DNA from: Piromyces finnis finn
Lineage: Eukaryota; Fungi; Neocallimastigomycota
Direction of reading: 5' to 3'
DNA: 64,000 bases
NCBI GenBank assembly: GCA_002104945.1
Contig: MCFH01000015.1
Span: 847,806-911,805 of the forward strand
This document shows positions 11,103 through 28,805 of the stretch, one piece after another. Every line of letters starts with the position of its first letter. Positions within the stretch are counted from its first letter, which is position 1. Position numbers and translations under genes: made by a program. The notes below the pieces were generated by a model. The model was not told the DNA's origin. It worked only from the letters and a program-made list of their open reading frames with translations, and ran no database searches.

Positions 11103-14100
11103 ATGGGAAAATCTCCACTTACACCTATTAAAGTGGATACAAAAGAATTTTTTAACCGCCTACAAACTACCAAGAGAGAACGTTCCCCAGGAAATACTCC
11201 CGTAAGAAAATCAAAGATGCCTAATCATTCCGGACAAATTAATGCTTCTACGAGTAATCCTACTCAGAAGCCAACTACTAATGAGGATCTCAAGGCCCTC
11301 ATTGAGTCTTTAACTGCTACCTTAACTGGGAATATCAATCAGTTAAAGGTTGATATTCAAGCTACCAGAAGGGAAAACGAAAGTCTCAATGATCGTTTGA
11401 CTGTTTTGGAAAACTCTACTCAAGTTATTATGGGTAAGATGGCTACTTTAGAAGTCAACGATGCTAGGAAAGACAATCAACTCGCTGATATCAAAGCTCA
11501 TATCAGCAAAGCTACTCAAAGAGTTGATGAGTTGTCTACTCCCGTTACTCCTTCTACTACTACCCCTCACGAACCTGACGGTGACGTCATCATGGGAGAT
11601 GCTTCGCCTCCAAACGTCGCTGAAAAAATGCTTTCTTACTCAGGAGAAAGTATTCAACTACGCAGATTCATCCGTCGATGCGAACACCACTTCTTAAGAC
11701 ACATCAAGTTCTATGGAAACAATGAAGCTATGAAAGTAAACTTCATTGAAGATTGTCTTACTGGTGATGCTGCAGATTGGTACGTTGTTGAACAAGCAGA
11801 CTTCCAGGAATCTCATCCGAATAGAAAAGTTCTTTACGAAGCTTTGAGTAAGAGATTCCTTAACCCGAAGGATATCAACATCACCAAAATCGACCTGATG
11901 AAGCTCAGACATAGTTGGGGAAAAGCTTCCGAATACTTAGGAAAATTCTCCCAATATGTCAAATTAATTGGATGTTCCGAAGACATTCAATTAACCATCA
12001 TGCTTTTCCAAGTTAGACCTACCGTGAACCACGCCTTTAGTAAGTTAACTTCTGATAGACAAACGTTAGAAGAACTGAAGAATCTTCTAATCAAATATGA
12101 TGCTTCCAAGGATACTTATTACGATGATACTTTGGAAAGACAAGCTAACTACAAGGACAAAGAGCCCTTAATAGCTAATTTATTAGGTATTCATGGCAGT
12201 CTTTATTCCAAAAACCCTAACAAGAATAACAATCGTAATAACAACCAAAGGAACAACAATAACAGCAATCGCCCGTCTAACCAAAAAGGAAAAGGCTCCA
12301 GTAACTTGGATAGCAAGTCTAGTACTAAAAATCCCAATAAAAGTACTAAACCTAATAATGGTACTTCATACTCCAGCTATCTCTGTGAAGTAGAAGAGCA
12401 AGATATCTTAGAGCTACCAAATCCTGATCCGGAGAAGTATCCCATCGTGAAGACTAGTGTAAAAACTTCTAAAGGATCTAGACAGGTTATCACTTCGTCT
12501 CTCTTAGATTCTGGCTCTACTACCAATGTAATCCATATGGATTTAGTGAAGAAACTAGGAATTAAGACCATACCAGCTGATACTGTTGTAAAGGTCATGG
12601 GAGGTAATGTCCTAATGCATTACATCACAGAAGAGTTCAACATTGTAATGAACTTATCTTCTTTAGGAAGAACTCGAGAAGAAGTTCGTCAATACAAACT
12701 TCGATGCCACGTAGCTGATCAGCTTCCTTCTTCGATTCTCCTAGGTTCTAAGTTCATGAAAACCAACTTCTTCTGTATCTTTACACAACCTGACCATTCC
12801 TTTACAGTTAAAATTGGTCCTGTTCCTTTCTCCAACCATAATGGATCTGAGATTAAATCTCCTAACTTTAGGAATGATTTGAAGAAATCTACACCTCTTC
12901 ATGAATTACGCGAAGTCCTCCAAAAGAGACAGTTCGTCTTAGACGAACAATGGGACAAAGAACATTTGAACGATCGAGGAAGAATCGTGATCAAGAAACA
13001 ATCAAGCAAGAAACCCAATAATAACCATGTCCACAACACAGAAACGATAACCCTATCCAACGAAGAAAAACTGAAAATCGAACAAAGGCTTCTTAAACAA
13101 AAACAAAACAATCAAAGTTTTATAATCTCAACTGACCATAAAGAAGGACTCGACGAATACATTATCAAGGAAATACAAAACCTCCCTCAAGAATTACAAG
13201 AATTCAAGCAAGTTTTCGGACCACCACCAAAGGGCAAGATATTTAATAGGAAAAACGAAAATTTAAATTCATACTTACCTTATGATAAGGAAAAAGTTAA
13301 GAGGCTACCCATGATGCCTCACATCAAATTAGACAAAAACCAAGAAGACGCTCTTGAACAAGAATTTCATGAACTTGAACAGAACGGAAAAATCGAGAGA
13401 ACTCGATCCAGTTCGGCTTGCAACGTCTTTAATGCACCTAAGAAAGATGGTACATTCAGAACTGTGTTTAATTACGTTATGGTTAATAATTGCCTACACC
13501 ATAACAACTACCCAATACCTAAAATAATCGAACTTGTACACAGAGCTGCCCAGTATAAGTTCCATATTTTACTAGATTTAAGAAATGCCTATAACCAAAT
13601 CTATCTCGAGCCCAAATATCGTTTCCTTACAAGCTTTAGATTTAAAAACCAAACCTATCAATGGAAAGTTCTTCCCTTTGGACTCTCCACTGCCCCATCC
13701 ATTTTCCAATCCATTCTCAACCTCTTATTAAAAATATACTTGAATAAAGGTATTGATATCTACCTAGATGATATACATATTTATGCCCAAGATAAGCAAG
13801 AATGCCTCAGACTTTGTGCTTACACTTTAAAGAAGTTCAAAGAAAATAATTTCTTTTGTAAACTTGAAAAATGCTTATTTTTCCCAGAAGAATTCGAATA
13901 TTTAGGGTACAAAATTGGATATGAAAAAATACGTCCTATTTCTAATAAAACTTTAGACATTAAAGAATGCAAAACACAAAAGGAATATCAGCAACTATAT
14001 GGCTTTCTTAATTATTTCAAAGACTACGTAAATAACTTTACCGAAAGAACAAAATATATCTCTATGGGACTATCAAATAAAACCACTACTTGGACTAAAG

Positions 14101-16118
14101 AAATGAATGACGAACTAAATTATTTTAAGAAATTAATTCCTAACCTTCCAAATTTAGCACCGTTTAAACCTAACCACGATATCTTTATCCTAACCGACGC
14201 ATCGGAAATCGGAATTGGCGCCGCAATTTTTCAAGCGGGGGCCCCCAATGTACATATTCAAAATTACATTTTAAGTAACGTATACAAGAATAATATTAAT
14301 CGTGAAATCATCGAAAACTTATTTGGTCATAAAAATTGGACATTAAACGGACATTCTGAAGTAAATGGACGTGAAAATAAGAAAATCGATAAAGCCAAGA
14401 ATCGTGAAGATATCAATCCACCAATTAAATTGAATGAAGCAATGAATACATTTGAAATAAAAAACAATAGTTTATCCGAATTAAAAAAGTATTTAAAACC
14501 CATAGGCTTTTTCTCCAGAAAATTGAATTCTACAGAAAGAAAATATTCAACATTCGACAGAGAATTATTAGCTCTCTCGGACACCTTACAACACTACCGG
14601 TTACTTCTCCAACAAGGACAAAAAATATACTGTGCGACGGACCATAAGAATTTGGTAATCTACATAAATTCCGGATCCAAAGTCGAAACTAATCGTAAGT
14701 TAAGATTATTTGAAAATATTTGCAATTACAATATAATACCTTATTATATCGAAGGAAAAGACAACAAGATTGCAGATCTACTCTCAAGATTTATTAAAAT
14801 GGAAAACGAAACCGAAAATACTAGCAACAGAAGAAACCCACAGCAGGTCAACAATATTGAAGAAACAAATTCTTTGGATTTCTTAGTAAATGCCATTGAA
14901 CTCAAGGACTTAGAATCTACCAACAAAGAAGAAGATAACGAGGAACCAGACTTAAAAGTCTTTAAGACTACCATAAGTTCGCTAATGGAAAATAATAAAC
15001 AAAAGGAACTAAAAAATTATCTTATCAATTGGTACAAGAACCAGGATATGTTATTCAAATCATTGAAGGAACAAATAGTAAACCTACTAGAAGAAAACAC
15101 TTTCTTCGAAAAACAATATAAAAAACAAGTTAATCTCAGATGTCAAGACCTAAAAGATGTATTGGATAAAAGAGAACATTTTAGTTCAGAAATAAAAAAG
15201 GTGAAAGATGAATTACAACTTCTACAAACTGGCAACACCCAAGGAGAAACTAAAAGAAAATTTGATAGACTTAATCAAAAAATAAACGATTTAAGGTATG
15301 ACCTCAATCCAAAGGCTGAAAGAATAGAACTCACTAAGAAAGTAAACCATTCGGAAAAACAGATAACTGCCCAATGGAAAGAGATAGAAAACCTCAAGAA
15401 AATAATAGAAAAAATGGATAAAAGGATAACTGCCCTAATCATTGACAACGAAGAAGACTCAAATCTGGATAAATCAACTTCCATTCCAACAGAAACAGTC
15501 TTCATAGTCGATGATCAGAATCCTGAACTAGTAGAATCTATCAACGGTATACCTTTGGAATATGAAGATTTATATGAAGCCTTCAATGAAGAACGAGCCG
15601 ATGAACTTCCTGAACATCGTGTATATGATTGTTCTATTGATTTGAAACCTAATGCTTCATTATTTTATGGGCCAATTTATCCAACTACTCCTACTGAACG
15701 TCAATTTATTAAGGAGTATATTGAAGAAAACTTGAATAAAGGATTCATTAGAAAATCCCGATCTCCTGCTGGACATCCAGTTCTACTCCAAGATAAGAAG
15801 GATGGTAGTCTCAGATTTTGCGTTGACTATCGCAAGCTCAACGACCAAACTATCAAGAATGCCTATCCGCTACCTTTAATCCTATCAGTCTTTGAATCAA
15901 TGAAAGGTGCTAACTATTTCACTAAGTTAGACCTCAAGTCAGCTTATAATTTAATTAGGATTAAAGAAGGTGACGAATACAAGACTGCATTTAGGACGGC
16001 ATTTGGTCACTTTGAGTACTTAGTCATGCCTTTTGGACTAACTAATGCTCCTGCAGTTTTCCAAGCTTTCATTAATGATATCTTTAGTGATCAAATTAAT
16101 AAGTACGTTCAAGTGTAA
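11103..16118 (+). CDS. B polyprotein part 1: Gag, protease, captured K-type RT-RNase H-coiled coil, N-half of native RT
   Basis: Gag YSGES..LTGDAADWY; LLDSGS; RT1 LDLRNAY, LPFGL, YLDD; RH1 LTDAS, RELLAL, TDHKNL, IADLLSR; RT2 LDLKSAY, MPFGL. Ends at a TAA replacing the Y of YLDD. Confidence 0.93.
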   Translation: MGKSPLTPIKVDTKEFFNRLQTTKRERSPGNTPVRKSKMPNHSGQINASTSNPTQKPTTNEDLKALIESLTATLTGNINQLKVDIQATRRENESLNDRLTVLENSTQVIMGKMATLEVNDARKDNQLADIKAHISKATQRVDELSTPVTPSTTTPHEPDGDVIMGDASPPNVAEKMLSYSGESIQLRRFIRRCEHHFLRHIKFYGNNEAMKVNFIEDCLTGDAADWYVVEQADFQESHPNRKVLYEALSKRFLNPKDINITKIDLMKLRHSWGKASEYLGKFSQYVKLIGCSEDIQLTIMLFQVRPTVNHAFSKLTSDRQTLEELKNLLIKYDASKDTYYDDTLERQANYKDKEPLIANLLGIHGSLYSKNPNKNNNRNNNQRNNNNSNRPSNQKGKGSSNLDSKSSTKNPNKSTKPNNGTSYSSYLCEVEEQDILELPNPDPEKYPIVKTSVKTSKGSRQVITSSLLDSGSTTNVIHMDLVKKLGIKTIPADTVVKVMGGNVLMHYITEEFNIVMNLSSLGRTREEVRQYKLRCHVADQLPSSILLGSKFMKTNFFCIFTQPDHSFTVKIGPVPFSNHNGSEIKSPNFRNDLKKSTPLHELREVLQKRQFVLDEQWDKEHLNDRGRIVIKKQSSKKPNNNHVHNTETITLSNEEKLKIEQRLLKQKQNNQSFIISTDHKEGLDEYIIKEIQNLPQELQEFKQVFGPPPKGKIFNRKNENLNSYLPYDKEKVKRLPMMPHIKLDKNQEDALEQEFHELEQNGKIERTRSSSACNVFNAPKKDGTFRTVFNYVMVNNCLHHNNYPIPKIIELVHRAAQYKFHILLDLRNAYNQIYLEPKYRFLTSFRFKNQTYQWKVLPFGLSTAPSIFQSILNLLLKIYLNKGIDIYLDDIHIYAQDKQECLRLCAYTLKKFKENNFFCKLEKCLFFPEEFEYLGYKIGYEKIRPISNKTLDIKECKTQKEYQQLYGFLNYFKDYVNNFTERTKYISMGLSNKTTTWTKEMNDELNYFKKLIPNLPNLAPFKPNHDIFILTDASEIGIGAAIFQAGAPNVHIQNYILSNVYKNNINREIIENLFGHKNWTLNGHSEVNGRENKKIDKAKNREDINPPIKLNEAMNTFEIKNNSLSELKKYLKPIGFFSRKLNSTERKYSTFDRELLALSDTLQHYRLLLQQGQKIYCATDHKNLVIYINSGSKVETNRKLRLFENICNYNIIPYYIEGKDNKIADLLSRFIKMENETENTSNRRNPQQVNNIEETNSLDFLVNAIELKDLESTNKEEDNEEPDLKVFKTTISSLMENNKQKELKNYLINWYKNQDMLFKSLKEQIVNLLEENTFFEKQYKKQVNLRCQDLKDVLDKREHFSSEIKKVKDELQLLQTGNTQGETKRKFDRLNQKINDLRYDLNPKAERIELTKKVNHSEKQITAQWKEIENLKKIIEKMDKRITALIIDNEEDSNLDKSTSIPTETVFIVDDQNPELVESINGIPLEYEDLYEAFNEERADELPEHRVYDCSIDLKPNASLFYGPIYPTTPTERQFIKEYIEENLNKGFIRKSRSPAGHPVLLQDKKDGSLRFCVDYRKLNDQTIKNAYPLPLILSVFESMKGANYFTKLDLKSAYNLIRIKEGDEYKTAFRTAFGHFEYLVMPFGLTNAPAVFQAFINDIFSDQINKYVQV

Positions 16119-18512
16119 TTGGATGATATCATTATCTACTCCAAGACCCTTGAAGAACATGTTCAACATGTTAGAAATGTTCTTCAATTAATCATTGAAA
16201 ACAACTTAGTTGCGAAACTCAAAAAATGTGAGTTTCACAAAGCTGAAATCGAATTTTTGGGTCACGTAATCAGTAAGGAGGGAATCAAAACTGATCCTCA
16301 CAAAATTGAAGCAGTTAAGAACTGGCCTATCCCCACTACTGTGAAAGAAGTTCAGTCTTTCTTAGGGTTATGCAATTACTACCGTCGCTTTATCTCTAAC
16401 TTTTCTAAAATTGCAAAACCATTATACAACTTAACTAAGAAAGGCGTCACTTTCATATGGACAGACGAGTGTAATAGAGCATTTAATCAACTTAAAGAAT
16501 TTCTTACTTCAGCTCCAGTTTTACTTTGTCCTGATCACGATAAACCATTCATAGTTGAATGTGACGCAAGTGACTTTGCTATCGGGGGAGTACTTTCACA
16601 AAAAGGTGATGATGGAGACCTGCATCCAGTTTATTACTTTTCTAAAACCCTTCATGATGCAGAACTTAATTACTCTATCACCGAAAAGGAACTCTTAGCA
16701 ATTCGTCAAGCTTTTATCGAATGGCGTCACTTACTTCAAGGTGCAAAATATCCTATTACCGTTTATTCAGACCATCGAAACTTGCTTTTTGCTACCAAAC
16801 CGCAACTTCTATCCCAAAGACAAGCTCGTTGGCAAGAATACTTTGCTACTTTTGATTTCAAGATTATCTATCGACCAGAAAAGAAAAATGGTAAAGCTGA
16901 TGCTCTCTCTCGTAGATCCGACCATATGCTCACAGTTGGTAAGGATATAAGTGAATCATCCTTACTTAAACCAACTCAATTAGAAGGATTCAACGAAGAT
17001 GAATGCTACTTCTCTATGGAAACTAGCTTCATTGACGACATTAAGCAGTGCTACCTTCAAGATGAAACCGCTTGTCAGATTCTTAAGGATCTTGAAGTTC
17101 CAAATAGTGATCATCCTTGGATTCTTCAAGATGGCCTTTTAATAAGAACCAAACATCCGGAGCAAGTATATGTTCCAAGTCAACTAAGACTCTTAGTTAT
17201 TAAGCTCAACCATGATGCACCCACTGCCGGTCACTTGGGAGTCGATAAGACTTATGACATTCTTAAACGTAATTTCTATTGGGTTAATATGCGTCAAGAT
17301 GTCGAGTCTTATATTCGAAGCTGTAGTGTATGCAAGGCAATGAAAACCGATCACCATGCTCCTTATGGTAATATGATCCGTGTCCCTCTTCCGGAACTTC
17401 CATGGCAACATCTACAAATGGACTTTATCACGGACTTACCATCAAGACCTTGTAACTCTACCTTACCATTCGACTCTACCAATCCGAACCACTATCAAGG
17501 TACCATAATGGTTACTACTTGCTACTTAACTAAGATGATACACTTAGTTGGGTTCAAACATTTATCCACTGCTAAGGAAACTGCTACTGCTTTTCTTAAC
17601 CATATTTTCAAACTGCACGGATTCCCCTTATCTATTGTTACAGACCGTGGTACTCAGTTCGAAAGTCGTCTTTGGTTCCACTTGATGGAATTCTTTAATA
17701 TCGATCACCACTCTGCTACTACTGGCCATCACCGCACTGTTGGACAAGTAGAACGTAACAACGACTACGTCGAAACTTATCTTCGTTGCTACTTAGCTCA
17801 ATTTGATGATCTCAGTTGGATGGATCATTTGTACTTAGCTGAATTTTGCTACAACAATTCCATCCATGCTTCCACCAAGCAACCACCATTTCTCTCCGTC
17901 TATAATTATCAAGTTCACGCAAACCCACAAATTGCAGACCTTGTTTCTTCTTTAGGACTTCATCCCCTCATCGATAGCTTCTCCCATAACTTAGCTGACC
18001 TTAAGCATACTCTCGAAGTCAGTCGTACCCGTTATCTCGATGAAAAGGATAAGCACCTTTATCACAACTTTAAGCGCTTCAAGGTCCACGATCTTGTTTG
18101 GCTTCGCAAACCCGCTAATTATCATCCTCCATTAGCGTTCAAGCTCCAAACCCGCAAGTATGGTCCATACAAGGTCACTGGTGTCGATGAATCTAAGCTC
18201 AACTACCGCCTTGATTTATCTACCTCACCTTTCCCTCGTGTCTACCCCGTATTCCACATCAGTGAACTCGAACCATATCATCCCACTCCTCACCATCTAT
18301 TGCTCAACCATCCCAACTCCAATGAAATCACCAAGATCCTTAGTTCTCGTAAATCGGGTCATTTTTACGAGTACTTAGTCACTTTTACTGACTTATCTCA
18401 ACGTTGGATCAATGCTGACACCATTGATAAGGATGACTACTACAGCACCCTTTTAGCTGATTACCAACGTCGCGCTTACCAACAATTCACCAATTCCGTC
18501 CCAGATTCTTAA
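16119..18512 (+). CDS. B polyprotein part 2 (same frame after one stop): RT C-half, RNase H, integrase, chromodomain-like
   Basis: LDDIIIY; ECDAS; HDAPTAGH..CSVC; MDFI, TDRG, QVER; RKYGPY; EYLVTF..RWI. Confidence 0.92.
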   Translation: MDDIIIYSKTLEEHVQHVRNVLQLIIENNLVAKLKKCEFHKAEIEFLGHVISKEGIKTDPHKIEAVKNWPIPTTVKEVQSFLGLCNYYRRFISNFSKIAKPLYNLTKKGVTFIWTDECNRAFNQLKEFLTSAPVLLCPDHDKPFIVECDASDFAIGGVLSQKGDDGDLHPVYYFSKTLHDAELNYSITEKELLAIRQAFIEWRHLLQGAKYPITVYSDHRNLLFATKPQLLSQRQARWQEYFATFDFKIIYRPEKKNGKADALSRRSDHMLTVGKDISESSLLKPTQLEGFNEDECYFSMETSFIDDIKQCYLQDETACQILKDLEVPNSDHPWILQDGLLIRTKHPEQVYVPSQLRLLVIKLNHDAPTAGHLGVDKTYDILKRNFYWVNMRQDVESYIRSCSVCKAMKTDHHAPYGNMIRVPLPELPWQHLQMDFITDLPSRPCNSTLPFDSTNPNHYQGTIMVTTCYLTKMIHLVGFKHLSTAKETATAFLNHIFKLHGFPLSIVTDRGTQFESRLWFHLMEFFNIDHHSATTGHHRTVGQVERNNDYVETYLRCYLAQFDDLSWMDHLYLAEFCYNNSIHASTKQPPFLSVYNYQVHANPQIADLVSSLGLHPLIDSFSHNLADLKHTLEVSRTRYLDEKDKHLYHNFKRFKVHDLVWLRKPANYHPPLAFKLQTRKYGPYKVTGVDESKLNYRLDLSTSPFPRVYPVFHISELEPYHPTPHHLLLNHPNSNEITKILSSRKSGHFYEYLVTFTDLSQRWINADTIDKDDYYSTLLADYQRRAYQQFTNSVPDS

Positions 18513-18844: not shown

Positions 18845-18889
18845 ACACTTAGAAAAATTTTGAGAATTTTCAAAAAATGGAAATTCTCA
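18845..18889 (+). repeat. Left arm of perfect 45-bp inverted repeat
   Basis: ACACTTAGAAAAATTTTGAGAATTTTCAAAAAATGGAAATTCTCA equals the reverse complement of 28051-28095. Confidence 0.95.
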
Positions 18890-20062
18890 ATTTTTGAAAA
18901 AAAATCTAAGGTAGCACGTAACGTATTACGAAGAGCAATGAGAAATAGAATGGTGCATAATAAAGCAAGACAATTGGCTCAAAATTTAGGACGTAGAGCA
19001 AGAGATAGGATTGTACGAAGAAATCGTAGGATTGGCAATAGACAATTCGAATCAGTTAAAGGAAATGCTGCTGGTACAACCCATACTACAACACGTATGA
19101 TAGTACGTAGAACACCACGCGAACAACGATTTTTACGCAAATTGTTTAAAACAAACCCTACTAAAAACAAATATATAAACAGATTTGGTTTTTCTTGGAT
19201 GGGTGCTGGTGCAGCCTCAAAAACTATTTGGTATAGTGTTTGTCATTTAAAGTTCAATAATTTATGTAATTATTTACAAGGTCGTAAAATCTTACCGACA
19301 CAGAGTATAGAAGGAGTTTCTGCTACAGTAACCAATGATAAAGCCGTGGGAAATTCCCCATCAGCTGGTATTTACGTTGGTAAATGTACATTCCATTACG
19401 AATTGTATAACCCAACTAATTATTTAATGACCGTATACATTTACGATTTAATTTGTAAATGTGATACACCACATCAAATAGCATATTCTGATGCTAATAA
19501 TGATGGTAATAGTGCCCCTGAAGCTTGTATGCAAAAGGGTTCAAAATCCATGACCGATGGAGGTTCTGCCCCAACATGGCAAGTTGCAGACCCTACACTC
19601 GAAATGGGTACATATTGGAATACTGTTGGTATGAAACCAACGGACTATCATTTATTTAATACGATTTGGAAAGTCAAAGGAATGAAAAAAATCATTTTAC
19701 CACCTGGATCATCACACCATCACGTGGTTATATACAACCCAAAAAAGAAGATAACCAATGCTAGTTTATTATACCCTAGAGAAACTAGACATACTAATAA
19801 TAAAATGGGTATTGGTGGTATTACACAAGCAACTTTATTTGGTTTTGAAGGTCAAGTTGCAACTGAAGACAATCAACGTAGTGATGGTACAATTGTAGGT
19901 ACATTACCTGGTAAATTATTAGTTAAATGTATTAAAAAGGTAAATATATGGGATCTTCCATGTAACTATCAATCAGTAACATCTGAAGATGATTTAGTAG
20001 CAACATGGACTAAACCAACTATATTCTCTGATTTAGTAGAAGTCAATGCAAGCTCTACATAA
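18860..20062 (+). CDS. CRESS-DNA-virus-like capsid protein (first in-frame ATG at 18938)
   Basis: Arg-rich N-terminus (RRARDRIVRRNRR), then YELYNPTN..VYIYDL, F..IWKV..KKIILPPG.SH.H.V, a pattern I recognise from STNV/gemini-like jelly-roll capsids. Convergent with Rep. No database search was possible. Confidence 0.8.
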   Translation: MRIFKKWKFSIFEKKSKVARNVLRRAMRNRMVHNKARQLAQNLGRRARDRIVRRNRRIGNRQFESVKGNAAGTTHTTTRMIVRRTPREQRFLRKLFKTNPTKNKYINRFGFSWMGAGAASKTIWYSVCHLKFNNLCNYLQGRKILPTQSIEGVSATVTNDKAVGNSPSAGIYVGKCTFHYELYNPTNYLMTVYIYDLICKCDTPHQIAYSDANNDGNSAPEACMQKGSKSMTDGGSAPTWQVADPTLEMGTYWNTVGMKPTDYHLFNTIWKVKGMKKIILPPGSSHHHVVIYNPKKKITNASLLYPRETRHTNNKMGIGGITQATLFGFEGQVATEDNQRSDGTIVGTLPGKLLVKCIKKVNIWDLPCNYQSVTSEDDLVATWTKPTIFSDLVEVNASST

Positions 20063-20063
20063 G

Positions 20064-20345
20064 AACACGTGACATACAACTAAGTTAACGTGTTTGATCC
20101 CTGTGAGCCGCAGGCTCTAGACCCTGGCCGTTGACTATCACATGTTTATATCTCATGGTGATCATGTGATGAGTCACACCCTCCCACTTATCCATAGCCA
20201 AGTGGTTCTGAGAGGATTGTTTCCTACTCTGGACGGACGGCTCTGGGGGAGTAGGAGGAACAGATTTTTTTATTATTTTTATTTAACACAAAATGTATAC
20301 AACACAAATATAATGTAATGTAATGTAAATATAATAAACTTTATT
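20064..20345. terminator. Structured 3' intergenic region between cap and rep, with opposed polyadenylation signals
   Basis: Several hairpins in 20064-20260. AATAAA-C-TTTATT at 20333-20345 abuts the Rep stop. Confidence 0.55.
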
Positions 20346-20476
20346 TAATATAATTTATTTTGTAAAACAATACAAGTACAATTTTTTTTTAAAAAGTTTA
20401 AGTGTTCAATATTTAAATTCTTATATAAATCTTCATTGGATAACCAAATCATTGGTTTTCCCCAATGAACCGTTCT
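20345..20476 (-). pseudogene. rep: C-terminal fragment of CRESS Rep (SF3 helicase motif C)
   Basis: RTVHWGKPMIWLSNED matches gemini/genomovirus-type motif C. Confidence 0.82.
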
Positions 20477-20563
20477 TTTAAAATTAAATTGCCTGTTCGT
20501 TTTAGTAAAAACTAACGGGGGCCTTTTCTTCAATGGTAACTAGATAATATGTAGCTATGGCTA
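20477..20563 (-). repeat. 3' terminal direct repeat of K
   Basis: TTTAAAATTAAATTGCCTGTTCG..GCTATGGCTA repeated at 27226-27312. Confidence 0.92.
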
Positions 20564-20941
20564 TATACTATTTCGGGTATTGGCCTACTTATCTTAGGAA
20601 ATCTAAAATACTTAAACCAATGTATATGTAGTATTGACGTTAAAGAGCCTACTTTAAGGAATTTTCACGTAAGTAAAACTCGTTTGTGATTTATGCGTTT
20701 TATATAATAATTTTATTTAATATGTTTTATTATAAGTTTATTTATAAGATCAAAGTTATTTAAAAGTTTGTTGTTTTATTAATTCTTTATCCTCTGTTGC
20801 TATATTGTCGAGGAAGACTATCTTTTTCTAGTGATTAATAATAACTAACAAATACTTTTAAAAGTTATAAAGTTTTATAAATAAATGAATTTTTTCGAAT
20901 TAATACGTTTGAGTTTAAAATTTTCGTTACAAATTTTATAT

Positions 20942-21045
20942 TACGAATTTAAATTACGAATTTTAACTACGAATTAAAACTACGAATTTTAACTACGAAT
21001 TAAAACTACGAATTTTAATCACGAATTTTAACCACGAATTTTAAA
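20942..21045. repeat. 8 x 13-bp tandem array (YACGAATTWWAAH) in the 3' region of K
   Basis: Units start at 20942, 20955, 20968, 20981, 20994, 21007, 21020, 21033. Confidence 0.9.
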
Positions 21046-21208
21046 TTAGAAAAAACTAAAGTTTTAAAATAATACATTTAGATGATATTTATACATGATT
21101 ATTAAATTTAGCTATAATATTATTAATAAACTATTACTAATAGAATTTTTAAAGTTATATTAAATATAAATAATTTTAACTAATTAGATTCATTTTTTGT
21201 GTTTAAAG

Positions 21209-22684
21209 TTAGTCAAATGTTTCTTGGTTCTTTTTCATTGGTTCATTTGTTAAATCGATTTCTATTTGAAAGTTCGAAAGTTTTCTTTTCTTAAGTTCAT
21301 TACTAATTACGGCTTCGGAAGCGGGGAAGATTTCCTTTAATTCGTTATCAATTATCAAAGCATTGATTCTTTTACTAATACTTTCGATTTTATTTCTAAG
21401 TTCTTCTGTTTCCTTCCATTGGGCAGTTAATTGTTTTTCCGTTTTATTAACCTTTCTAGTAAGTTCGATGCGTTCGGCCTTTGGGTTTAGATCATATCTA
21501 AGGTCGTTGATTTTTTGATTTAATTTGTTGAATTTTCTTTTAACTTCTACTTGAGTGTTTCCTGTTTGAAGAAGTTGAATTTCGTCTTTTACCTTTTTAA
21601 TTTCTTGATTAAACTGTTCCTTTCTGTCCAAGACTTCTTTTAAGTCTTCGCATCTTAAATTAATCTGCTTTTTATATTGTTTTTCATAATAAGTGTTTTC
21701 TTCTAATAGGTTAATAATTTGTTCTTTCAAGCTTTTGAATAGTTTATCCTGATTTCGATACCATTTGTATAGGTAATCCTTTAATTCTTCTTGTTTATTG
21801 CTTTCGATTAATGAATTGATTGTAACTTTAAAGACTTTGAAGTCGGTGTCTTCTTTCTTTTCATTATTGTTTGATGATTCCTTATCTTTTAATTCAATTG
21901 TGTTGATTATAAAATCTAGTGAGTTCATTTCCTCTATGTTGTTTATCTGTTGTGGATTAGCTATAGTATTATTGTTTACTTCATTACTTTGTTCCATTTT
22001 GATAAATCTTGATAATAGGTCCGCTATTTTGTTATCTTTTCCTTCTATGTAGCAAGGTATAACATTAAAATTGCAAATATTCTCGAATAGTCGTAGCTTT
22101 CTATTTGTTTCGACTTTGGAACCAGAGTTGATATAGATTACTAGGTTCTTGTGGTCCGTGGCGCAATAGATTTTTTGTCCCTGTTGAAGTAATAATCTGT
22201 AGTGATGAAGAGTATCTGAAAGGGCTAGCAGTTCACGATCAAAAGTCGAGTATTTTCTCTCAGTTGAATTTAGTTTTCTTGAAAAGAAACCTATTGGCTT
22301 TAAATATTTTTTAAGTTCTGTTAAACTATTATTCTTTATTTCAAATGTATTCATAGCCTCATTTAATTTCATTGGAGGATCGATATCTTCACGATTTTTG
22401 GCTTTATCGGATTTATTATTTTTGCGTCCATAATGTCCGTTATACGTCCACTTCTTATGACCAAATAGATTTTCGATTGTTTCACGATTGACATTATTCT
22501 TGTATACGTTACTTAAAATGTAATTTTGAACATGTACATGGGGGCCCTCCGCTTGGAAAATTGCGGCACCAATTCCGATTTCCGAGGCGTCGGTTAGAAT
22601 AAAAATGTCATGGTTAGGTTTGAAAGGGACTAAATCTGGAAGGTTAGGGATTAAATTTTTGAAGTAATTAAGTTCTTCGTCCAT
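21209..22684 (-). pseudogene. K RNase H plus C-terminal coiled-coil domain
   Basis: LTDASEIGIG, RELLAL, TDHKNL, IADLLSR. Joined to the upstream RT frame if 1 bp is restored near 22855. Confidence 0.88.
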
Positions 22685-22824
22685 TTCTTTGGTCCAGGCG
22701 GTGTTTTTGTTAGATAATCCTAAGGAAATGTTTTTTGTTTTTTCTGTAAAGTTATTAACATAATCTTTAAAGTAATTTAAGAATCCATAAAGTTGTTGAA
22801 ATTCTTTTGGAGAATTGCATTCTT

Positions 22825-24846
22825 TTATTTCAAGGTTTTTTTTAGATATTGGGCGGTTTTTTCGAAACCAATTTTGTAGCCTAAATATTCAAATTCTTCG
22901 GGGAAGAAAAGACATTTTTCAAGTTTACAAAATAAATTATTATCTTTAAATTTTTTAAGTGTATAGGCACATAGTTTAATACATTCTTCTTTGCTTTGAG
23001 CGTAGATATGGATGTCGTCCAAGTAAACATCGATTCCTTTATTCAAATAATCTTTTAATAATAAATTAAGAATAGATTGAAAGATAGAGGGCGCTGTTGA
23101 TAATCCGAAGGGTAAAACTTTCCATTGGTATGTTTGGTTCTTGAAACGGAAGCTTGTTAAGAAGCGATATTTCGGTTCTAGAAAAATTTGATTATAAGCG
23201 TTTCTAAGATCTAGGAGAATGTGATATCTATATTGAGCGGCTCTATGTACTAACTCAATGATTTTTGGAATCGGGTAGTTATTATGATGTAAGCAGTTAT
23301 TTACCATTACATAGTTGAAGACAGTTCTAAACGTACCATCCTTCTTTGGAACGTTGAATACATTGCATGCGGAACTGGATCTGGTTTTTTCGATCTTTCC
23401 ATTTTCCTCTAATTCACGAAACTCTTCTTCAAGGGCGTCTTCTTGTTCTTTATCGAGTTTAATGTGGGGCATCATTGGGAGCCTCTTTACCTTTTCCTTA
23501 TCGTAAGGTAAGTAAGCATTCAAGTTATTGACTTTCCTGTCAAATATTTTTCCTTTTGGAGGAAATTCAAAAACTTGTTTGTATTCTTGAAGTTCACTTG
23601 GCAAGTTTTGAATTTCCTTAATGATATATTCTTCCAAACCTTTTTTATGGTCGGTTGAAATAATAAAGCTTTGGTTATCTTGTTTTTGCTTGAGTAGTTT
23701 CTGCTCAATCCTTAGTTTTTCGTCTGTAGAGAGCGTTATTATTTCTGTATTATGAGTATGATTAGAATTTTTCTTATATTCATTTCGTTTTTTAGTAACG
23801 ATTTTTCCTCGATCGTCTAGATTTTCGTTATCCCATTTTTCATCGATTACATATTTTCTTTTTTGAAGTGTTTCTCTAAATTCTTCTTTTCTGTTATCCT
23901 CAAAGTTTAAGAAATACGGGAAGTACCTAGCTTCTAAATGTAATTTCCTCATTTTAAATAATAAATCATCGTTAAGGATTATTTTGTCATAATAGAAGTT
24001 CTTTTTCTGATGGTTAATCGGACCATTGATAGGCATAATGCTTAACCTAACATTAGTAAAATAAAATATTCCCTTTTTTATTTCTACTCCTATAGTGAGA
24101 TAACAATACTCTTTTATTTCGGTTATGGTTTCCCCCGATTGTATAGTGTGTGAAATGTTATTATTGTATCTTTTAATGTTGAGGTTGGCGATTATATTTT
24201 CACCAATACAATTTCCGGCAGAACCTGAGTCTAAGAGGACAATTCCATATTTGGCGTTATGTTTATTGTCTATAATAAGAGCCTTGTTATAATGCATCTT
24301 GCCGCCGAAACGTGGGTTATTTAAGAACTTCGAGTTTTTGATGGTTTCCATAGTGTTATGGATATACTCTTGAGTAAGTTTTTCCCGTTGAATGTGACTT
24401 ATACTTTTATCTATAATACTTTTTTCTGTATTGTGTGTGGAGGATGGCCTCCCTATAATGTTTTTAGTCTTTTTAGCTTCCAATTTTTTGGTGTATTTTG
24501 AATATTTTGAATTACTATTATTTATTGGTTTGACCTTATTATGAGTGAAGGTGGGTTTTGGATGGTTAACAAATAACTTGAGGTCTTCCCTCATACTTTT
24601 TTCACCTTCATCTTCTGCTATAGTTTTGAATATGATGTTGATAAGTTCTTGGTAAATAGTCTTGTTTTCTTCATCTTGGTCTTCAAAGTTTTCTCTTGGG
24701 TCTTTCACAGGTAGCTTAGGAAGTTTCTTCAGACATTTTTCGGCAAAGGCGGTAGGCAATGCCTTAGATAATTTCGTAAATCTATTATAGTATGGCTTAT
24801 TGATGTTATTACCAATTTTTTCCATATTTTCCAAAAATATTTCCAA
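22825..24846 (-). pseudogene. K Gag C-part, protease and RT
   Basis: LLDSGS; LDLRNAY, YQWKVLPFGL, YLDD. In frame with 25075-27078 across a single TAA (76 open codons between). Confidence 0.88.
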
Positions 24847-25074
24847 GTTTTCAATGTTAAGATAGTTTATCTTTAAAGTTTTCCATTTAACTTCCTGTTC
24901 TTGAAGGGAAAGTTCGCAGAATTCCCTTTCGAATTGATAAATGAAATTGTTAAGTTTTTGCCAAGTAGTGGATTCGTTCCACTCTAATTCTTTATTATCT
25001 AATTTATTTTTGTATATGTTTTCGAACCATTGTTTGACTTCCTTGCCTCCCCTAGCAATGATGGCGTCTCTGAT

Positions 25075-27078
25075 TTATATTTCGTTTACCCTTGGGCAAT
25101 AGGTCTGTAAATATGTTTTGAGACTAGATAGGTATTCATAACCGTTATGTTTGTTCTTGTACCTTGGTGCTGGCACTTTAAATAAAGACCTGAACCCTGA
25201 TATATTCTGCTGAATCTCAAGGGGTAAGTCTTGAAATTCTGTTGGGCGAAAGGGCACGACAGGACTAGTTCTTGAATCGTATATTCTAGGATGGGTCTTA
25301 TAGTGATAATATTGTTCACTTTTAGATCCTTTACTAAAATCAGGTTTAGTTTTCTGAATTAACCTCTTAAATTTTTCTCTATTTACTTCTTCAGGAGTAT
25401 TGTACATTTTTGTACGATGAAACTTGATGTCAAAATAATTTTGTTTTGCTTCTTCACTTTTAAAACCGGCGTTAAATCTTGAAGTAATATCTTCTTTATT
25501 ACTTGTATTATATGATGTAGAAGCTCTGTACGGATTTGAAGAGCTTTCTTTAATTGATTCAAGTTTTCTGTTGAAGTTTTCTTCTTGTTCTTTAAACTTA
25601 TCATTAATTCGTTTATTTTGTTCCTCTTCCCTATCGTCTAAGGTTGAATGTCCTATGAAGGACTTACTTCTGAACTTCGATATATTGCTGAAGGAAATTT
25701 CTTCGGTAGGATGATTAAAGCTTGTATCCATAAGATATTTTTCATTGATGAGGGTATTAATAATTCTTCTGCAAGTTTCATTTTTTGGTTGGATGGTTAC
25801 TTCTAAATTTTCTTGGTTAATAGTAGCAGCGAAGAGTTTCTTCGTCTTTACATTACTATGAAATAATAGCTTATATTCTTCTTGGATATTATCGATCTCG
25901 AGATGACCTATTTCATTAAGTTTCTTCTTTACAATAGTTATCTCCTTCAAACATTGTTTAATCGATTCATCTTGAATAGAGTTTTGAAGATTATCATATT
26001 TTGTTAGTAACTCTTCGTAAAGTTTCTTTACATTATTTAATTGTTCTTCGACTTGATGATTATTTTCTGAATTTAACAGTTCTGTTTCTAAAGTTTTAAT
26101 ACGTTCTTGTAATTGAGTTTGAAGAACTGCATGGTCTTCGAGGTTTTTACGGAAAGTTTCCATATTTTTATTGAACGATTCTTCAGCTTTACCATTAATG
26201 TGATATGTAGTGATTAATTGATCTTGAAGCTTCTTGATAGCCTCCTTAGAATCTATTCTAGTGGCCTGTAGTTTTTCGGCCATTTCGTTTTTAATATTAG
26301 TCGTAAGGTTATCGGTATAAGTGACGTTTTCGGTAGTTTGAAGTGTGATTTTTTCAATTTCTTTCTCCACTTGTGTTAATCTTTTTGTTAGATTGGTTAC
26401 CTCTTGGTTGTTGCCTTCAATAGCTGCTTGTTGTTGAGAAAGGCCGTTTTCGAGTGGTAATAAATCTTGAGACTTCGCAGTAGTAAGCTGACTTTGTTGA
26501 AGTTCTTCGCGAACCTCATTTACAGCGATGTTTAATTCTGTGGGCTTTACAGTGTTGAGATCTATAACATTTGCTAAATTTTGTACCTGATAAGCATCGG
26601 CCTTGTTAGCCATTTTTGTATCCATTTGTTCAATCCTTTTATTTTGTTCCATTATAGAAGTCTGTAAAGTCGCATTTATGGTGGCGGTAAGAGTCATAAA
26701 TTGAGTCTGCATTTGTTCCATGAAATTTTTCATCATGGTTTGCAGTTCCTCCTTGTTGCTATTAGTTTCAGTCTTTATTTCCTTATACATGTTATCCATG
26801 GATGCTAGTAGAGTGGCTCCATTATTCTCTGGATTATAGTCGAGTATTTGATTATTTCCGCCGTAAGTATTTTTAATCTCAGTTTCTAATGTTTTTATAT
26901 CTTCAATGTCGTCAGAGAGTTTTTCAAGATAATCATTTACTCCTGACATGCTTGATTTTGAGTCTTGTTCAATTTTCTCAATTTCCATTGAATGTTGATT
27001 TTCGGAGGACTTATTTATTTCTGCCTTTGGAGTATCCTTGTGGTCAACTGGTTGCTTTCCTTTGTTAGAATTTTTCAT
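25075..27078 (-). pseudogene. K coiled-coil/Gag-like N-terminal region
   Basis: Long heptad-rich ORF; the frame continues after TAA as IRDAIIARGGKEVKQWFE. Confidence 0.75.
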
Positions 27079-27225
27079 CTTGGATGGTAAGAATTTTGTT
27101 TTTGTCTTTGTAATAATAAATTTGACAGTTAAAATCGGTTAAGGACTTCTGGCCTTTAATTAGATTTCTTAATTATTTATACGAGTTTAGGTCCAAACAG
27201 GAATAGAATTAGAAGTTTTTTCTAA

Positions 27226-27323
27226 TTTAAAATTAAATTGCCTGTTCGTTTTAGTAAAAACTAACGGGGGCTTTTTCTTCAATGGTAACTAGATAATATG
27301 TAGCTATGGCTACATATTATCTA
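27226..27323 (-). repeat. 5' terminal repeat of K ending in a 15-bp perfect fold-back
   Basis: TAGATAATATGTAGC-TATG-GCTACATATTATCTA at 27290-27323. Confidence 0.9.
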
Positions 27324-28051
27324 AAGTACATATGCTTACCTAAGGACCTAGCCCATTCAGTTTTTCCGCTTCTACTTGGGCCTATGAGTATCAAGCTTTG
27401 TGGTCTGGACCACTCCCCAAAACGATGGAAATTTTCAAGCCAACCTTGAAAGTAGCATATTTTCCACAGCAAGTTCTTCTGGTAGCTTAAAGTCGCTTTG
27501 TGTGTATGGAGATATATACTCGCGTTTAGGTTCTTCAGGAAACATCTTCTTAATGTAGGCTATCCAGTTAGTAAAGTGGTTTGCGAATCTTGAGGCAAAT
27601 CCTTCTTCGTGTAGGCGTTGGATTACTTGATTTTGTGTTAACTTTTCGCTTAAGTAACGATCCCAGTCTGGATCTTTACTTTCATTTCCGTCAAGTTTTA
27701 AAAGATTCCCATTCAAAGGTAGATAAAGGACACTTATCTTCTTTGGTTAAGTATTTGATCATGGGAACAATACTTCTTGAGCCGTTTCTTTTGACAGTGG
27801 AAATATGTGGGTGTAAACCACACATATCAAAGTTAAACTCGTTTACGGTTACCCTTTTTGTAAACCTGATAAGCGTGAAAATGACGCTTTCCAGTCACGT
27901 GACCTGTTTCTTCGTCAACCATAAGCTTATCCACATGAACGTCGGCAATAACTAGTAGCTGTAAGCACGCGTATAATTCTTCTTTGGTTACATCACGTGC
28001 ATCGGCATAGGTTAATCCAAAGTCACGTTTTCTTAATACGAAAGCTGGCAT
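27323..28051 (-). pseudogene. rep: CRESS Rep, N-terminal part (HUH endonuclease and Walker A), three frameshifts
   Basis: Motif I FGLTY, motif II RHFHAY, GRS-like FDMCGLHPHI, motif III YLTKED, Walker A LILIGPSRSGKTEWARSLGKHMYF. Read by hand across three frame changes. Confidence 0.9.
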
Positions 28052-28095
28052 GAGAATTTCCATTTTTTGAAAATTCTCAAAATTTTTCTAAGTGT
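28051..28095 (-). repeat. Right arm of perfect 45-bp inverted repeat
   Basis: Reverse complement of 18845-18889; its last base is the A of the likely Rep ATG. Confidence 0.95.
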
Positions 28096-28184: not shown

Positions 28185-28805
28185 TGTCACAATAACATAT
28201 AAAAATTTAAAAAATTTGGACACATGGAAAAAATTAAAAATTTTTTTAAAATTTGAAAATTTGAAAATTTGAAAAAATTTATTTTTTAAATTTTTATTAA
28301 AAAATTTCAAATTATAAAATTTCTAATATTCAAAATTATTAAATTTTTTTTAAAAATTATTAAAATTTTATTATAAAAAATTTTTATTTTTAAATTTATT
28401 AACTATTTACAATAATTATATTAATTATTAATTTATAAAAATTAAATATTTTATAATTAGACAATAATTAATTAAAATTAAAAAATGTAATAATTAAAAT
28501 TGTTCATGTATAAAAAGAACAAAAATTGACAAAAATTACGAAGCTTTAGCGTTAGTAATTTTTTAACTTAAAGTTAATAAAATTTATAAACTCCTATAAA
28601 ACCTAAAACTTTAAAAATTTTAATATTTTTAATAACTTAATATATGCTGATATTAAGTTATTGCTAAAATAAAAATATTATTTAATTTTCTTTATATAAA
28701 TATTATTAGCTTTACGCCTTCAATAAGAAAGCGTATTATATTTGTTAATTAATATAACTAGTGTGCTTACCACACTTTTCTTTAATAAAAAATCGCTTTT
28801 TGACA
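28185..28805 (+). repeat. 3' LTR of B
   Basis: Direct repeat of 10429-11021. Confidence 0.92.

What the first reader, a model, noticed from the sequence alone, without database searches (positions are those of the whole stretch)
20477..27323. Integrase-less LTR-type retroelement family (K)
Seen: a roughly 1950-codon frame (one TAA at 25075, one 1-bp deletion near 22855) encoding coiled coil/Gag-like, protease, RT, RNase H and a C-terminal coiled coil of about 190 residues where integrase should be. The remaining 0.7 kb has no ORF, and there are no TG..CA ends, TSD, tyrosine recombinase or CCHC motif. The copy captured in B shares the RT-RH-coiled-coil layout up to IIDNE, so integrase loss looks like a family trait. 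Inference: an episomal, pararetrovirus-like or helper-dependent retroelement.
Basis: partly seen in the sequence, partly recalled or inferred. Interest (0 to 1): 0.8.

Follow-up and report, generated by a model that had tools for sequence, protein, structure and literature searches.

The report
Integrase-less Ty3-like retroelement of gut fungus
This is one copy of a retrovirus-like element family of the anaerobic gut fungus Piromyces finnis that replaced its integrase with a conserved coiled coil, and its genomic copies sit in the chromosome with irregular ends, as DNA pasted in by host repair would.

Summary
Window 20477-27323 (minus strand) is a 6.85-kb retroelement. It has one polyprotein frame of about 1,956 codons, broken by one stop and one frameshift. 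The frame encodes an N-terminal coiled-coil protein, protease, Ty3-type RT, RNase H, a helical coiled coil of about 160 residues and a basic tail. It encodes no integrase or tyrosine recombinase.

The window is Piromyces finnis MCFH01000015.1. Four further copies in that genome, and the module inside the neighbouring element B, end in the same coiled coil. The coiled coil and tail are under purifying selection (pN 0.11-0.17 against pS 0.64-0.79). Integrase loss is therefore an old family trait.

The family keeps the landmarks of LTR-type reverse transcription:
- a purine tract at a U3 start;
- a conserved hairpin at the R start;
- a primer-site-like motif with a perfect 20-24-nt complement in the 3' non-coding region.

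No copy examined has two LTRs. Copy ends are heterogeneous: a 95-98-nt terminal redundancy, none, a 5' truncation, a permuted copy and a copy longer than one unit. Target duplications measure 0-1 bp, 2 to about 13 bp and 20 bp. This fits integrase-independent insertion of reverse-transcription products, including circular or concatemeric forms. An episomal lifestyle is compatible but unproven, and helper dependence is not supported.

The parts
20477..27323 (-). K1: the whole inserted copy of the integrase-less element
   Evidence: Bounded by 95-98-nt terminal redundancy. Collinear at 74.8% nt with a full-length copy in P. finnis locus L001. Flanked on both sides by halves of one Rep-like gene.
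27226..27323 (-). 5' terminal redundancy (R-U5-like), starting with a perfect 15-bp hairpin (27290-27323)
   Evidence: (I17) and 114: -27.8 kcal/mol, z -7.3. A hairpin of different sequence sits at the same place in L015.
27214..27234 (-). M5: primer-site-like motif, perfectly complementary to M3
   Evidence: (I6), 49, 50, 87 and 109: 21 nt, 0 of 300 shuffles reach it.
27079..27213 (-). 5' leader
21209..27078 (-). Polyprotein gene, broken by one premature stop and one frameshift
24241..27078 (-). N-terminal region: long coiled coil followed by an all-helical part of unknown fold
   Evidence: No Pfam family. Relatives only in P. finnis. pN 0.18 against pS 0.88 versus L015. No profile match to Ty3-type Gag. 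The model is low-confidence and helical.
23881..24237 (-). Aspartic protease (DSG)
   Evidence: Translation. Aligns with the protease of K2, which Pfam scores as Asp_protease_2.
22870..23352 (-). Reverse transcriptase (YLDD)
   Evidence: RVT_1, E 9e-29. Nearest solved structure is Ty3 RT.
21995..22627 (-). RNase H of Ty3 type, with an insertion of about 90 residues
   Evidence: RT_RNaseH, E 6e-18, matching only profile positions 30-90. Translation.
21341..21814 (-). Coiled coil in the place of integrase
   Evidence: 77-80% amino-acid identity to K2 with pN 0.13 against pS 0.79. Long helices in the model. Only sub-threshold coiled-coil hits in Pfam and PDB.
21212..21340 (-). Conserved C-terminal tail with a basic KKRK-type motif
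   Evidence: Conserved in K1, P0156, P0274 and P0275. pN 0.11-0.17 against pS 0.64-0.72.
21281..21292 (-). Purine tract (plus-strand primer candidate), followed by nearly invariant nucleotides
   Evidence: The left end of the L005 copy starts 2-3 nt after this tract.
20477..21278 (-). LTR-equivalent (U3-R-U5, about 800 bp), overlapping the last 22 codons
   Evidence: Inferred. The same stretch stands once between a 3' part and a 5' part in L015 and L005.
21037..21057 (-). M3: complement of M5 in the 3' non-coding region
20928..21044 (.). Array of 8.9 copies of a 13-bp unit
   Evidence: (D1).
20477..20574 (-). 3' copy of the terminal redundancy, with a weakened hairpin
12903..15452 (+). K2: second, diverged copy of the linker-RT-RH-coiled-coil module, in frame inside element B
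   Evidence: 75.6% nt identity to K1. Amino-acid identity is 84% in RT, 90% in RH and 77% in the coiled coil, with saturated synonymous sites.
11103..18512 (+). Polyprotein frame of element B (2,469 codons, one stop): coiled coil, Ty3-capsid-like, protease, K module, then its own RT-RH-integrase
10429..11021 (+). Left LTR of B (TGTCA...TGACA)
28185..28805 (+). Right LTR of B, 93.7% identical to the left one and preceded by a purine-rich stretch
27324..28063 (-). Upstream part of the Rep-like gene that K1 interrupts (itself broken)
   Evidence: Motifs read in the ORF translations. Weak Gemini_AL1_M hit at the P-loop, E 0.035.
20345..20476 (-). Downstream part of the same Rep-like gene
18860..20062 (+). 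400-aa ORF with an arginine-rich N-terminus (capsid-like), convergent with the Rep-like gene
   Evidence: A second copy at 98% nt identity is in L001. No family or structure hit.

Best explanation
K is a family of retroelements of Piromyces, derived from Ty3/Metaviridae-type ancestors. It has lost integrase and carries a conserved coiled coil plus a basic tail in its place. One unit is about 6.75 kb: a single polyprotein gene (N-terminal coiled-coil protein, protease, RT, RNase H, coiled coil) and about 0.9 kb of non-coding sequence. The element still reverse-transcribes in the LTR manner. A purine tract marks a U3 start just before the stop codon. A hairpin marks the R start. Directly after R lies a motif (M5) at the position of a primer-binding site. 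Its perfect complement (M3) sits in the 3' non-coding region of the same RNA, so the RNA may prime itself or fold end to end (inferred). Lacking integrase, its DNA products reach the chromosome only through host break repair. Those products would be linear molecules, run-off intermediates, and single-LTR circles or concatemers. This would explain copies with heterogeneous ends, permuted or longer-than-unit layouts, and target duplications of 0 to 20 bp. Shown here: domain content, absence of integrase across copies, selection on the coiled coil, the landmarks, the junction anatomy and the empty sites. Inferred: the priming mode, the repair pathway, and whether transcription normally runs from unintegrated DNA.
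For: Domains, with no integrase or recombinase.
Same C-terminus in K1, L001, L005, L015, L016 and the annotated P. finnis proteins.
Purifying selection on every part, with saturated synonymous sites.
RT-RH nearest to Ty3 (195 bits) and further from the caulimovirus-type polymerase (105 bits).
Outside the family, the best relatives share only 27-34% identity. Three of the six scanned (P0131, P0138, P0144) show integrase domains.
M5/M3 is 20-24 nt perfect in four copies that differ by about 25% overall. It carries compensatory differences, and 0 of 300 shuffles reach it.
The hairpin is conserved with a different sequence.
Purine tract and nearly invariant nucleotides, with the L005 left end 2-3 nt downstream.
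The K1 right end falls exactly where M5's unique part begins, and the K1 left end at the hairpin base.
Empty-site comparisons: L001 in the protease of an A-type element, with no loss of target; L016 in an A-type LTR, 0-1 bp; L005 with a 20-bp duplication in an E-type LTR.
Permuted L015 and longer-than-unit L005 pass through one copy of the non-coding region.
The redundancy of more than 300 nt in L005 is 100% identical, so that insertion is recent.
Endogenous caulimovirids show the same kind of tandem, rearranged, repair-mediated integration: PMC10377300.
Against: Only five P. finnis copies plus K2 were examined, so a master copy with two full LTRs could exist elsewhere. The K1 junction could also come from a normal insertion followed by a deletion that removed most of a 5' LTR and part of the Rep-like gene. 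The Rep-like gene does seem to lack the stretch between its P-loop and its last helicase motif, but that is my reading and not a tool result. The L001 duplication is ambiguous (2 to about 13 bp), because the empty site comes from a paralogue only 83% identical. A 5' truncation and a 20-bp duplication also fit target-primed insertion by another element's machinery. No tRNA-type primer site was found, so the priming mode is a guess. Both structure models are of low confidence.
Confidence: 0.6

Rival explanations
1. K is a true pararetrovirus-like agent. The replicating form is an unintegrated circular DNA of about 6.75 kb in the nucleus, transcribed into terminally redundant RNA. The chromosomal copies are accidental dead ends, as in endogenous caulimovirids.
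For: There is no integrase in any copy. Permuted and longer-than-unit copies pass through a single non-coding region. K1 has a 95-98-nt terminal redundancy. None of the five copies examined is a self-sufficient unit, meaning a promoter-bearing LTR followed by an intact full-length gene. Yet all parts are under purifying selection and one insertion is very recent. The integration anatomy matches that reviewed for endogenous caulimovirids. This is a special case of the best explanation rather than its opposite.
Against: There is no evidence of extrachromosomal DNA, particles or transmission. The RT is Ty3-like and not caulimovirid-like. No movement or envelope gene is present. Single-LTR circles are ordinary by-products of LTR elements, and tandem arrays can arise by unequal recombination. 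The sample of copies is small.
Confidence: 0.3
2. K is a non-autonomous LTR element inserted by the integrase of the chromoviruses that surround it (helper-dependent).
For: Intact integrase-bearing chromoviruses lie in the same window. The K module also sits inside the integrase-bearing element B.
Against: No K copy has paired LTRs or TG..CA ends. Target duplications are 0-1, 2 to about 13 and 20 bp, and none for K1, instead of one fixed short length. Copies are 5'-truncated or permuted. K ends do not resemble the TGTCA...TGACA ends of B.
Confidence: 0.07
3. K is a DIRS/Ngaro-like element that uses a circular intermediate and a tyrosine recombinase, lost here or supplied in trans. M3 would act like an internal complementary region.
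For: Complementarity between the 5' end and an internal 3' segment. Junction-containing copies. Insertions in L016 and K1 without a duplication.
Against: No recombinase domain appears in any frame of any copy. A protease is present and the RT-RH is closest to Ty3. One copy has a 20-bp duplication, and copy ends are heterogeneous, which site-specific recombination would not give. There are no inverted terminal repeats.
Confidence: 0.05
4. The copies are RNA-templated insertions made by another element's target-primed machinery, like processed pseudogenes.
For: 5' truncation in L016. A variable and sometimes long target duplication (20 bp in L005). L001 looks like a copy running from near the RNA start to a point inside the 3' non-coding region.
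Against: There is no A-tail at any 3' end. 3' ends differ between copies. Permuted L015 and longer-than-unit L005 cannot come from a single unit-length RNA. No non-LTR element was seen in the window or loci, though I did not search for one.
Confidence: 0.05

Closest known systems
Ty3/gypsy elements (Metaviridae), including the chromoviruses in this window
   Same: Protease-RT-RNase H order. RT-RH sequence is closest to Ty3. There is a purine tract at the U3 start, an R region and a primer-site position, all in a single polyprotein.
   Different: No integrase, no chromodomain and no CCHC motif. A coiled coil plus basic tail follows RNase H. The RNase H carries an insertion of about 90 residues. 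No copy has paired LTRs, there are no TG..CA tips, and target duplications are irregular. RT identity to the resident chromoviruses is only 30-37%.
Caulimoviridae and their endogenous copies
   Same: Protease-RT-RNase H without integrase. Integrated copies are fragmentary, permuted or tandem-like, sit in repeat-rich AT-rich DNA and have repair-type junctions. One copy has a terminal redundancy.
   Different: The host is a fungus. The RT is much closer to Ty3 than to the caulimovirus-type polymerase (195 against 105 bits). No movement protein, zinc-knuckle coat protein or tRNA-Met primer site was seen. If the lifestyle is similar, it arose independently.
DIRS1-type tyrosine-recombinase retroelements
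   Same: An internal segment is complementary to a terminal segment. Forms containing a junction exist.
   Different: No tyrosine recombinase and no inverted terminal repeats. A protease is present. Insertion points within the unit are heterogeneous.
Self-priming LTR elements of fungi (Tf1 type; from my own knowledge)
   Same: There is no tRNA-like primer site, and a stretch of the element's own RNA is complementary to the primer-site position.
   Different: In Tf1 the complementary stretch is the first few nucleotides of the RNA. Here it lies about 6 kb away in the 3' non-coding region, and self-priming is only an inference.
Integration of unintegrated retroviral or hepadnaviral DNA by host end joining (from my own knowledge)
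   Same: Insertion at breaks, with small or no duplications, truncated ends and microhomology.
   Different: Those are rare side events for viruses with another main route. For K this may be the only route into the chromosome.

Membership tests
Metaviridae (Ty3/gypsy LTR retrotransposons) | Ty3-type RT and RNase H | tested here: met
   RVT_1 and RT_RNaseH hits. Best solved relatives are Ty3 RT 4ol8 and 7q5b.
Metaviridae (Ty3/gypsy LTR retrotransposons) | Aspartic protease upstream of RT | tested here: met
   DSG motif in K1. Asp_protease_2 in the aligned K2 region.
Metaviridae (Ty3/gypsy LTR retrotransposons) | Integrase (H2C2 zinc finger plus DDE core) after RNase H | tested here: not met
   No rve or Integrase_H2C2 hit in K1, K2's K part, L001 or the annotated C-terminal proteins. 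The resident chromoviruses score clearly in the same scans.
Metaviridae (Ty3/gypsy LTR retrotransposons) | Two LTRs with TG..CA tips | tested here: not met
   K1 has only a 95-98-nt redundancy. L001 has no flanking repeat of 25 nt or more. The tips are not TG..CA.
Metaviridae (Ty3/gypsy LTR retrotransposons) | Fixed 4-6-bp target duplication | tested here: not met
   None for K1; 0-1 bp for L016; 2 to about 13 bp for L001; 20 bp for L005.
Metaviridae (Ty3/gypsy LTR retrotransposons) | Gag with a Ty3-type capsid domain and zinc knuckle | tested here: inconclusive
   K1-type N-terminus: no Pfam hit, hhalign probability 0.4% and a low-confidence model. The N-terminus upstream of K2 has a sub-threshold Ty3_capsid hit (E 1.5e-4), but it may belong to B.
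Caulimoviridae / pararetroviruses | Protease-RT-RNase H polymerase without integrase | tested here: met
Caulimoviridae / pararetroviruses | Polymerase sequence groups with caulimovirids | tested here: not met
   105 bits to chain 8r0s ('Enzymatic polyprotein') against 195 bits to Ty3 RT. No tree was built.
Caulimoviridae / pararetroviruses | Movement protein and zinc-knuckle coat protein genes | tested here: not met
   There is a single ORF, and no such Pfam families were found.
Caulimoviridae / pararetroviruses | Episomal circular DNA as the transcribed genome | not testable with these tools
   Only indirect hints: junction-spanning copies and a terminal redundancy.
DIRS/Ngaro tyrosine-recombinase retroelements | Tyrosine recombinase gene | tested here: not met
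   No recombinase family in any ORF of K1, L001 or L007.
DIRS/Ngaro tyrosine-recombinase retroelements | Inverted terminal repeats with an internal complementary region, or split direct repeats | tested here: inconclusive
   M5/M3 complementarity exists. There are no inverted terminal repeats and no split-repeat layout.
Non-autonomous LTR derivatives (helper-dependent) | LTR tips shared with an autonomous helper, and helper-type target duplication | tested here: not met
   K ends differ from the chromovirus and B LTR tips. Duplications are irregular.

The most novel reading that the evidence does not exclude
K is the chromosomal trace of a reverse-transcribing agent of fungi that lives as unintegrated nuclear DNA. 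It would be an independent, Metaviridae-derived pararetrovirus-like lineage. Its polymerase would end in a coiled coil with a nuclear-targeting tail that took over the non-catalytic roles of integrase, such as multimerisation, nuclear entry or tethering.
Probability: 0.3. Interest if true: 0.9.

Novelty: new variant of a known kind. Interest (0 to 1): 0.7.

Why it matters
Loss of integrase from a Ty3-like ancestor is one proposed origin of plant pararetroviruses (reviewed in PMC10377300). If the reading here is right, the same step has been taken independently in an early-diverging fungus. The reverse-transcription landmarks are still legible, and recent insertions are available for study. That gives a natural system for three questions. 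What replaces the non-catalytic functions of integrase? How does a retroelement persist when it can enter chromosomes only through host repair? Do fungi harbour reverse-transcribing DNA agents? The three literature searches I ran found no fungal pararetrovirus. It also matters for annotation: standard LTR finders will miss this family because no copy has paired LTRs.

Tried and rejected
- Exact look-ups of window proteins found nothing.
- The word search over the RH-coiled-coil region in long proteins returned only generic integrase-bearing Ty3/gypsy hits covering RNase H.
- The metagenome scan with the RH-coiled-coil alignment gave three distant RNase H loci and no K copy.
- The viral-contig scan with the capsid-like ORF found nothing.
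- No tRNA genes were found in the window, and no conserved tRNA-type primer site appears in the leaders.
- The bacterial promoter/terminator scan is irrelevant for this host.
- Both structure predictions were of low confidence (pLDDT 41 and 39), so I ran no fold search. A first attempt with a 958-residue target failed.
- Comparing a profile of the K1-type N-terminus with Ty3-type Gag gave no match.
- I first took the 95-nt repeat for duplicated target (Rep-like) sequence. I rejected this when L005 and L015 proved homologous to it at the K junction.
- I first took the 3' end of L016 to reach the R start. The empty site showed that those bases belong to the flank.
- The weak PDB similarity of the coiled coil to kinetochore coiled coils (E about 1e-3) is most likely compositional.
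- Locus L018 holds a more diverged relative, too rearranged to use for end analysis.


Full report
**Source and setting.** The window is very AT-rich, with 14-39% G+C per 2 kb, and is a nest of retroelements. Locus L017 was fetched through an annotated Piromyces finnis protein. It carries both K copies of the window at 100% identity, so the window is P. finnis GCA_002104945.1, contig MCFH01000015.1. P. finnis is an anaerobic gut fungus (Neocallimastigomycota).

**The observation.** On the minus strand, 27078 to 21209 is one frame of about 1,956 codons with two breaks, one premature stop and one frameshift. I searched the three open pieces separately and never joined them.
- Pfam finds RVT_1 (E 9e-29) and RT_RNaseH (E 6e-18) and nothing else. 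The chromoviruses in the same window give clear integrase, zinc-finger, chromodomain and CCHC hits in the same kind of scan.
- The translation shows a DSG protease and a YLDD polymerase motif.
- The usual end of a Ty3-type RNase H is followed by a low-complexity linker, about 160 residues of heptad-rich sequence and a 43-residue tail.
- A shallow-alignment AlphaFold model is of low confidence, but it makes residues 280-470 of that piece a few very long helices.
- Scans at relaxed thresholds give only sub-threshold coiled-coil families.
- The 0.73 kb after the stop has no ORF of 80 aa or more. It holds a 13-bp tandem array.

The stated bounds coincide with a 95-nt direct repeat that is 96.8% identical. 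The upstream copy begins with a perfect 15-bp hairpin reaching 27323.

**Integrase loss is a family trait.**
- The second copy in the window (K2, 12903-15452) shares the linker, RT, RNase H and coiled coil with K1 at 75.6% nucleotide identity.
- Non-synonymous differences are few (pN 0.06-0.13) while synonymous sites are saturated (pS 0.7-0.9). This holds in the coiled coil too (pN 0.13, pS 0.79).
- The exhaustive protein search found close relatives only as fragments from P. finnis, Piromyces sp. E2 and metagenome contigs. Everything else shares 27-34% identity. Of six of those distant hits scanned against Pfam, three (P0131, P0138, P0144) show integrase domains.
- The annotated P. finnis proteins P0156, P0274 and P0275 end with the same tail as K1.
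- Genomic loci L001, L005, L015 and L016 carry the same RNase H, coiled coil, tail and stop arrangement.
- Against L015 and L005, the coiled coil and tail again show pN 0.11-0.17 and pS 0.64-0.78. The N-terminal protein shows pN 0.18 and pS 0.88.

The coiled coil is therefore a long-maintained, functional replacement and not debris.

**Affinity.** The RT-RNase H of K scores 195 bits against Ty3 RT. It scores 105 bits against chain 8r0s ('Enzymatic polyprotein', which I take to be the caulimovirus polymerase of PMC11363490) and 78 bits or less against retroviral enzymes. It is only 30-37% identical to the chromovirus RTs of the same window. K is thus an isolated Metaviridae-type lineage and not a caulimovirid.

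**The N-terminus.**
- The K1-type N-terminal region is about 950 residues: a long coiled coil followed by a helical part. It has relatives only in P. finnis and more distantly in metagenome locus L007.
- It has no Pfam family and no profile similarity to Ty3-type Gag. I cannot call it Gag.
- The candidate capsid region straddles the stop in K1, so I could not examine it as one natural piece from the window. The model of the part after the stop is helical but unreliable.
- In that work I used the NCBI gene model P0278 as it stands. Its predicted introns may skip breaks of the L001 copy.

K1 and K2 are unrelated upstream of the protease, and their proteases share only 33% identity. The shared unit is therefore the RT-RH-coiled-coil module.

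**Landmarks of reverse transcription.**
1. A run of 12-13 purines, followed by nearly invariant nucleotides, lies about 66 nt before the stop in all five copies aligned. The left end of the L005 copy starts 2-3 nt after it. This is what a plus-strand primer site and U3 start look like.
2. The hairpin at the left end of K1 recurs at the same map position in L015 with a different sequence.
3. Directly after the 95-nt redundancy lies M5, whose perfect complement M3 lies about 170 nt after the stop. The match is 21 nt in K1, 20 in L015, 21 in L005 and 24 in L001. The core is TAGAAAAAACT, and the flanking positions differ between copies in a compensatory way. None of 300 dinucleotide shuffles per copy reaches the observed length; the maximum is 15-17.

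The right end of K1 falls exactly where the unique part of M5 begins in the 5' copy. K1 therefore reads as R-U5, primer site, gene, purine tract, U3-R-U5. That is the product expected if minus-strand synthesis ran to the RNA 5' end and the plus-strand transfer never completed the left LTR (inference). No conserved tRNA-type primer site is present. Self-priming or end-to-end folding through M3/M5 is my inference.

**How copies sit in the genome.**
- **L001** (6.7 kb, two breaks) interrupts the protease of an element 83% identical to chromovirus A of the window. The two flanks abut at A positions 4828/4829, so no target was lost. The copy has no terminal repeat of 25 nt or more, and the duplication is 2 to about 13 bp.
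- **L016** lacks about 550 nt at its 5' end and sits in an A-type LTR between positions 504 and 506.
- **L005** lacks the N-terminal protein and the protease. It starts at the U3 start and runs through the non-coding region, M5 and the gene. It ends inside the next U3. More than 300 nt of its redundancy are 100% identical, and a 20-bp target duplication flanks it in an E-type LTR.
- **L015** is permuted: RNase H, coiled coil and tail, then one non-coding region, then the leader and N-terminal protein. Its junction is collinear with the K1 3' end, one copy of the 95 nt and the K1 5' end.
- **K1** has no target duplication. It splits a Rep-like gene that seems to lack the segment between its P-loop and last helicase motif. 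That is my reading, supported only by a weak Pfam hit.

Ends and duplications are therefore irregular, which a retroviral-type integrase does not produce. The junction-containing copies imply single-LTR circles, concatemers or tandem arrays as sources. Endogenous caulimovirids, which also lack integrase, show the same picture (PMC10377300).

**The copy in B.**
- The 593-620-bp repeats at 10429-11021 and 28185-28805 begin TGTCA and end TGACA. They are 93.7% identical, and the second is preceded by a purine-rich stretch.
- They bound an LTR element whose 2,469-codon frame has a single stop. The frame holds a coiled coil, a sub-threshold Ty3-capsid-like domain, a protease, the K module in frame, and then the element's own RT, RNase H and integrase.
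- Between the integrase and the right LTR lie a capsid-like ORF and the Rep-like gene that K1 interrupts.
- The five bases outside the two LTRs differ, so B may be a recombinant.

The K module can thus also travel inside an integrase-bearing element. This does not restore an integrase to the K family proper.

**Verdict.** Helper dependence is unlikely, and an episomal lifestyle is possible but unshown.

**Limits.** Only five P. finnis copies plus K2 were analysed. The protein-search quotas are spent. The structure models are weak. No transcript or extrachromosomal data were available.

- While working out frames I handled the ORF-piece bounds returned, which coincide with the K1 breaks.

Noticed in passing
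window 18860-20476 and 27324-28063: A pair of convergent genes resembling a circular Rep-encoding ssDNA virus unit. One is a 400-aa ORF with an arginine-rich N-terminus. The other is a broken Rep-like gene (rolling-circle motifs and a P-loop as I read them; Gemini_AL1_M, E 0.035). The pair lies between the integrase and the right LTR of element B. The capsid-like ORF recurs at 98% nt identity in L001 19752-20630. No hit in Pfam, PDB sequences or IMG/VR.
   Followed up: partly
window 10429-28805: Element B is an LTR element with TGTCA...TGACA LTRs that are 93.7% identical. Its flanking pentamers do not match. Its polyprotein contains two RT-RNase H modules (the K module and its own) in one frame with a single stop. 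It is 11.5 kb long without K1.
   Followed up: partly
window 21995-22627 (also 14100-14800 in K2): The RNase H of the family carries an insertion of about 90 residues after the first catalytic-Asp region. Pfam matches only profile positions 30-96. The insertion is conserved between K1 and K2.
   Followed up: no
window 21215-21292 and the aligned stretches of L001, L005, L015, L016: The last 22 codons overlap the purine tract and U3 start. Many nucleotides there are invariant even at synonymous positions. The conserved basic tail (KKRK-type) may therefore be constrained at the nucleic-acid level as well as the protein level.
   Followed up: partly
P0156 residues 22-121 (equivalent to window 21500-21800): The coiled coil gives weak PDB sequence hits to kinetochore coiled coils (AME1, E about 1e-3; Spc24, E 0.08). 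These are probably compositional, but they are a lead for a tethering role.
   Followed up: no
window 275-7157, 36262-43486, 47289-53545: Chromoviruses A and E have 100% identical LTR pairs (729 and 603 bp) and long open polyprotein frames. C has LTRs 98.8-99.4% identical. These are very young insertions, and A- and E-type sequences are the targets of K copies elsewhere in the genome.
   Followed up: partly
L006 8900-12500 (Piromyces sp. E2, KZ150851.1): K-family fragments lie in mixed orientations, forming a rearranged cluster. The family therefore exists in a second Piromyces species.
   Followed up: no
L005 7152-7796: The otherwise 100% identical left LTR-equivalent of the L005 copy is interrupted by a fragment of an A-type LTR. 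This is a nested insertion younger than a very young K insertion.
   Followed up: partly
L007-L011 and L002-L004 (metagenome contigs): More distant relatives of K share 49-77% amino-acid identity in the RT region. L007 also has an N-terminal ORF 25-28% identical to the K1-type one. They occur in many JGI, ENA and Logan samples; I did not check what those samples are. Their 3' parts are cut off by contig ends or other elements.
   Followed up: no
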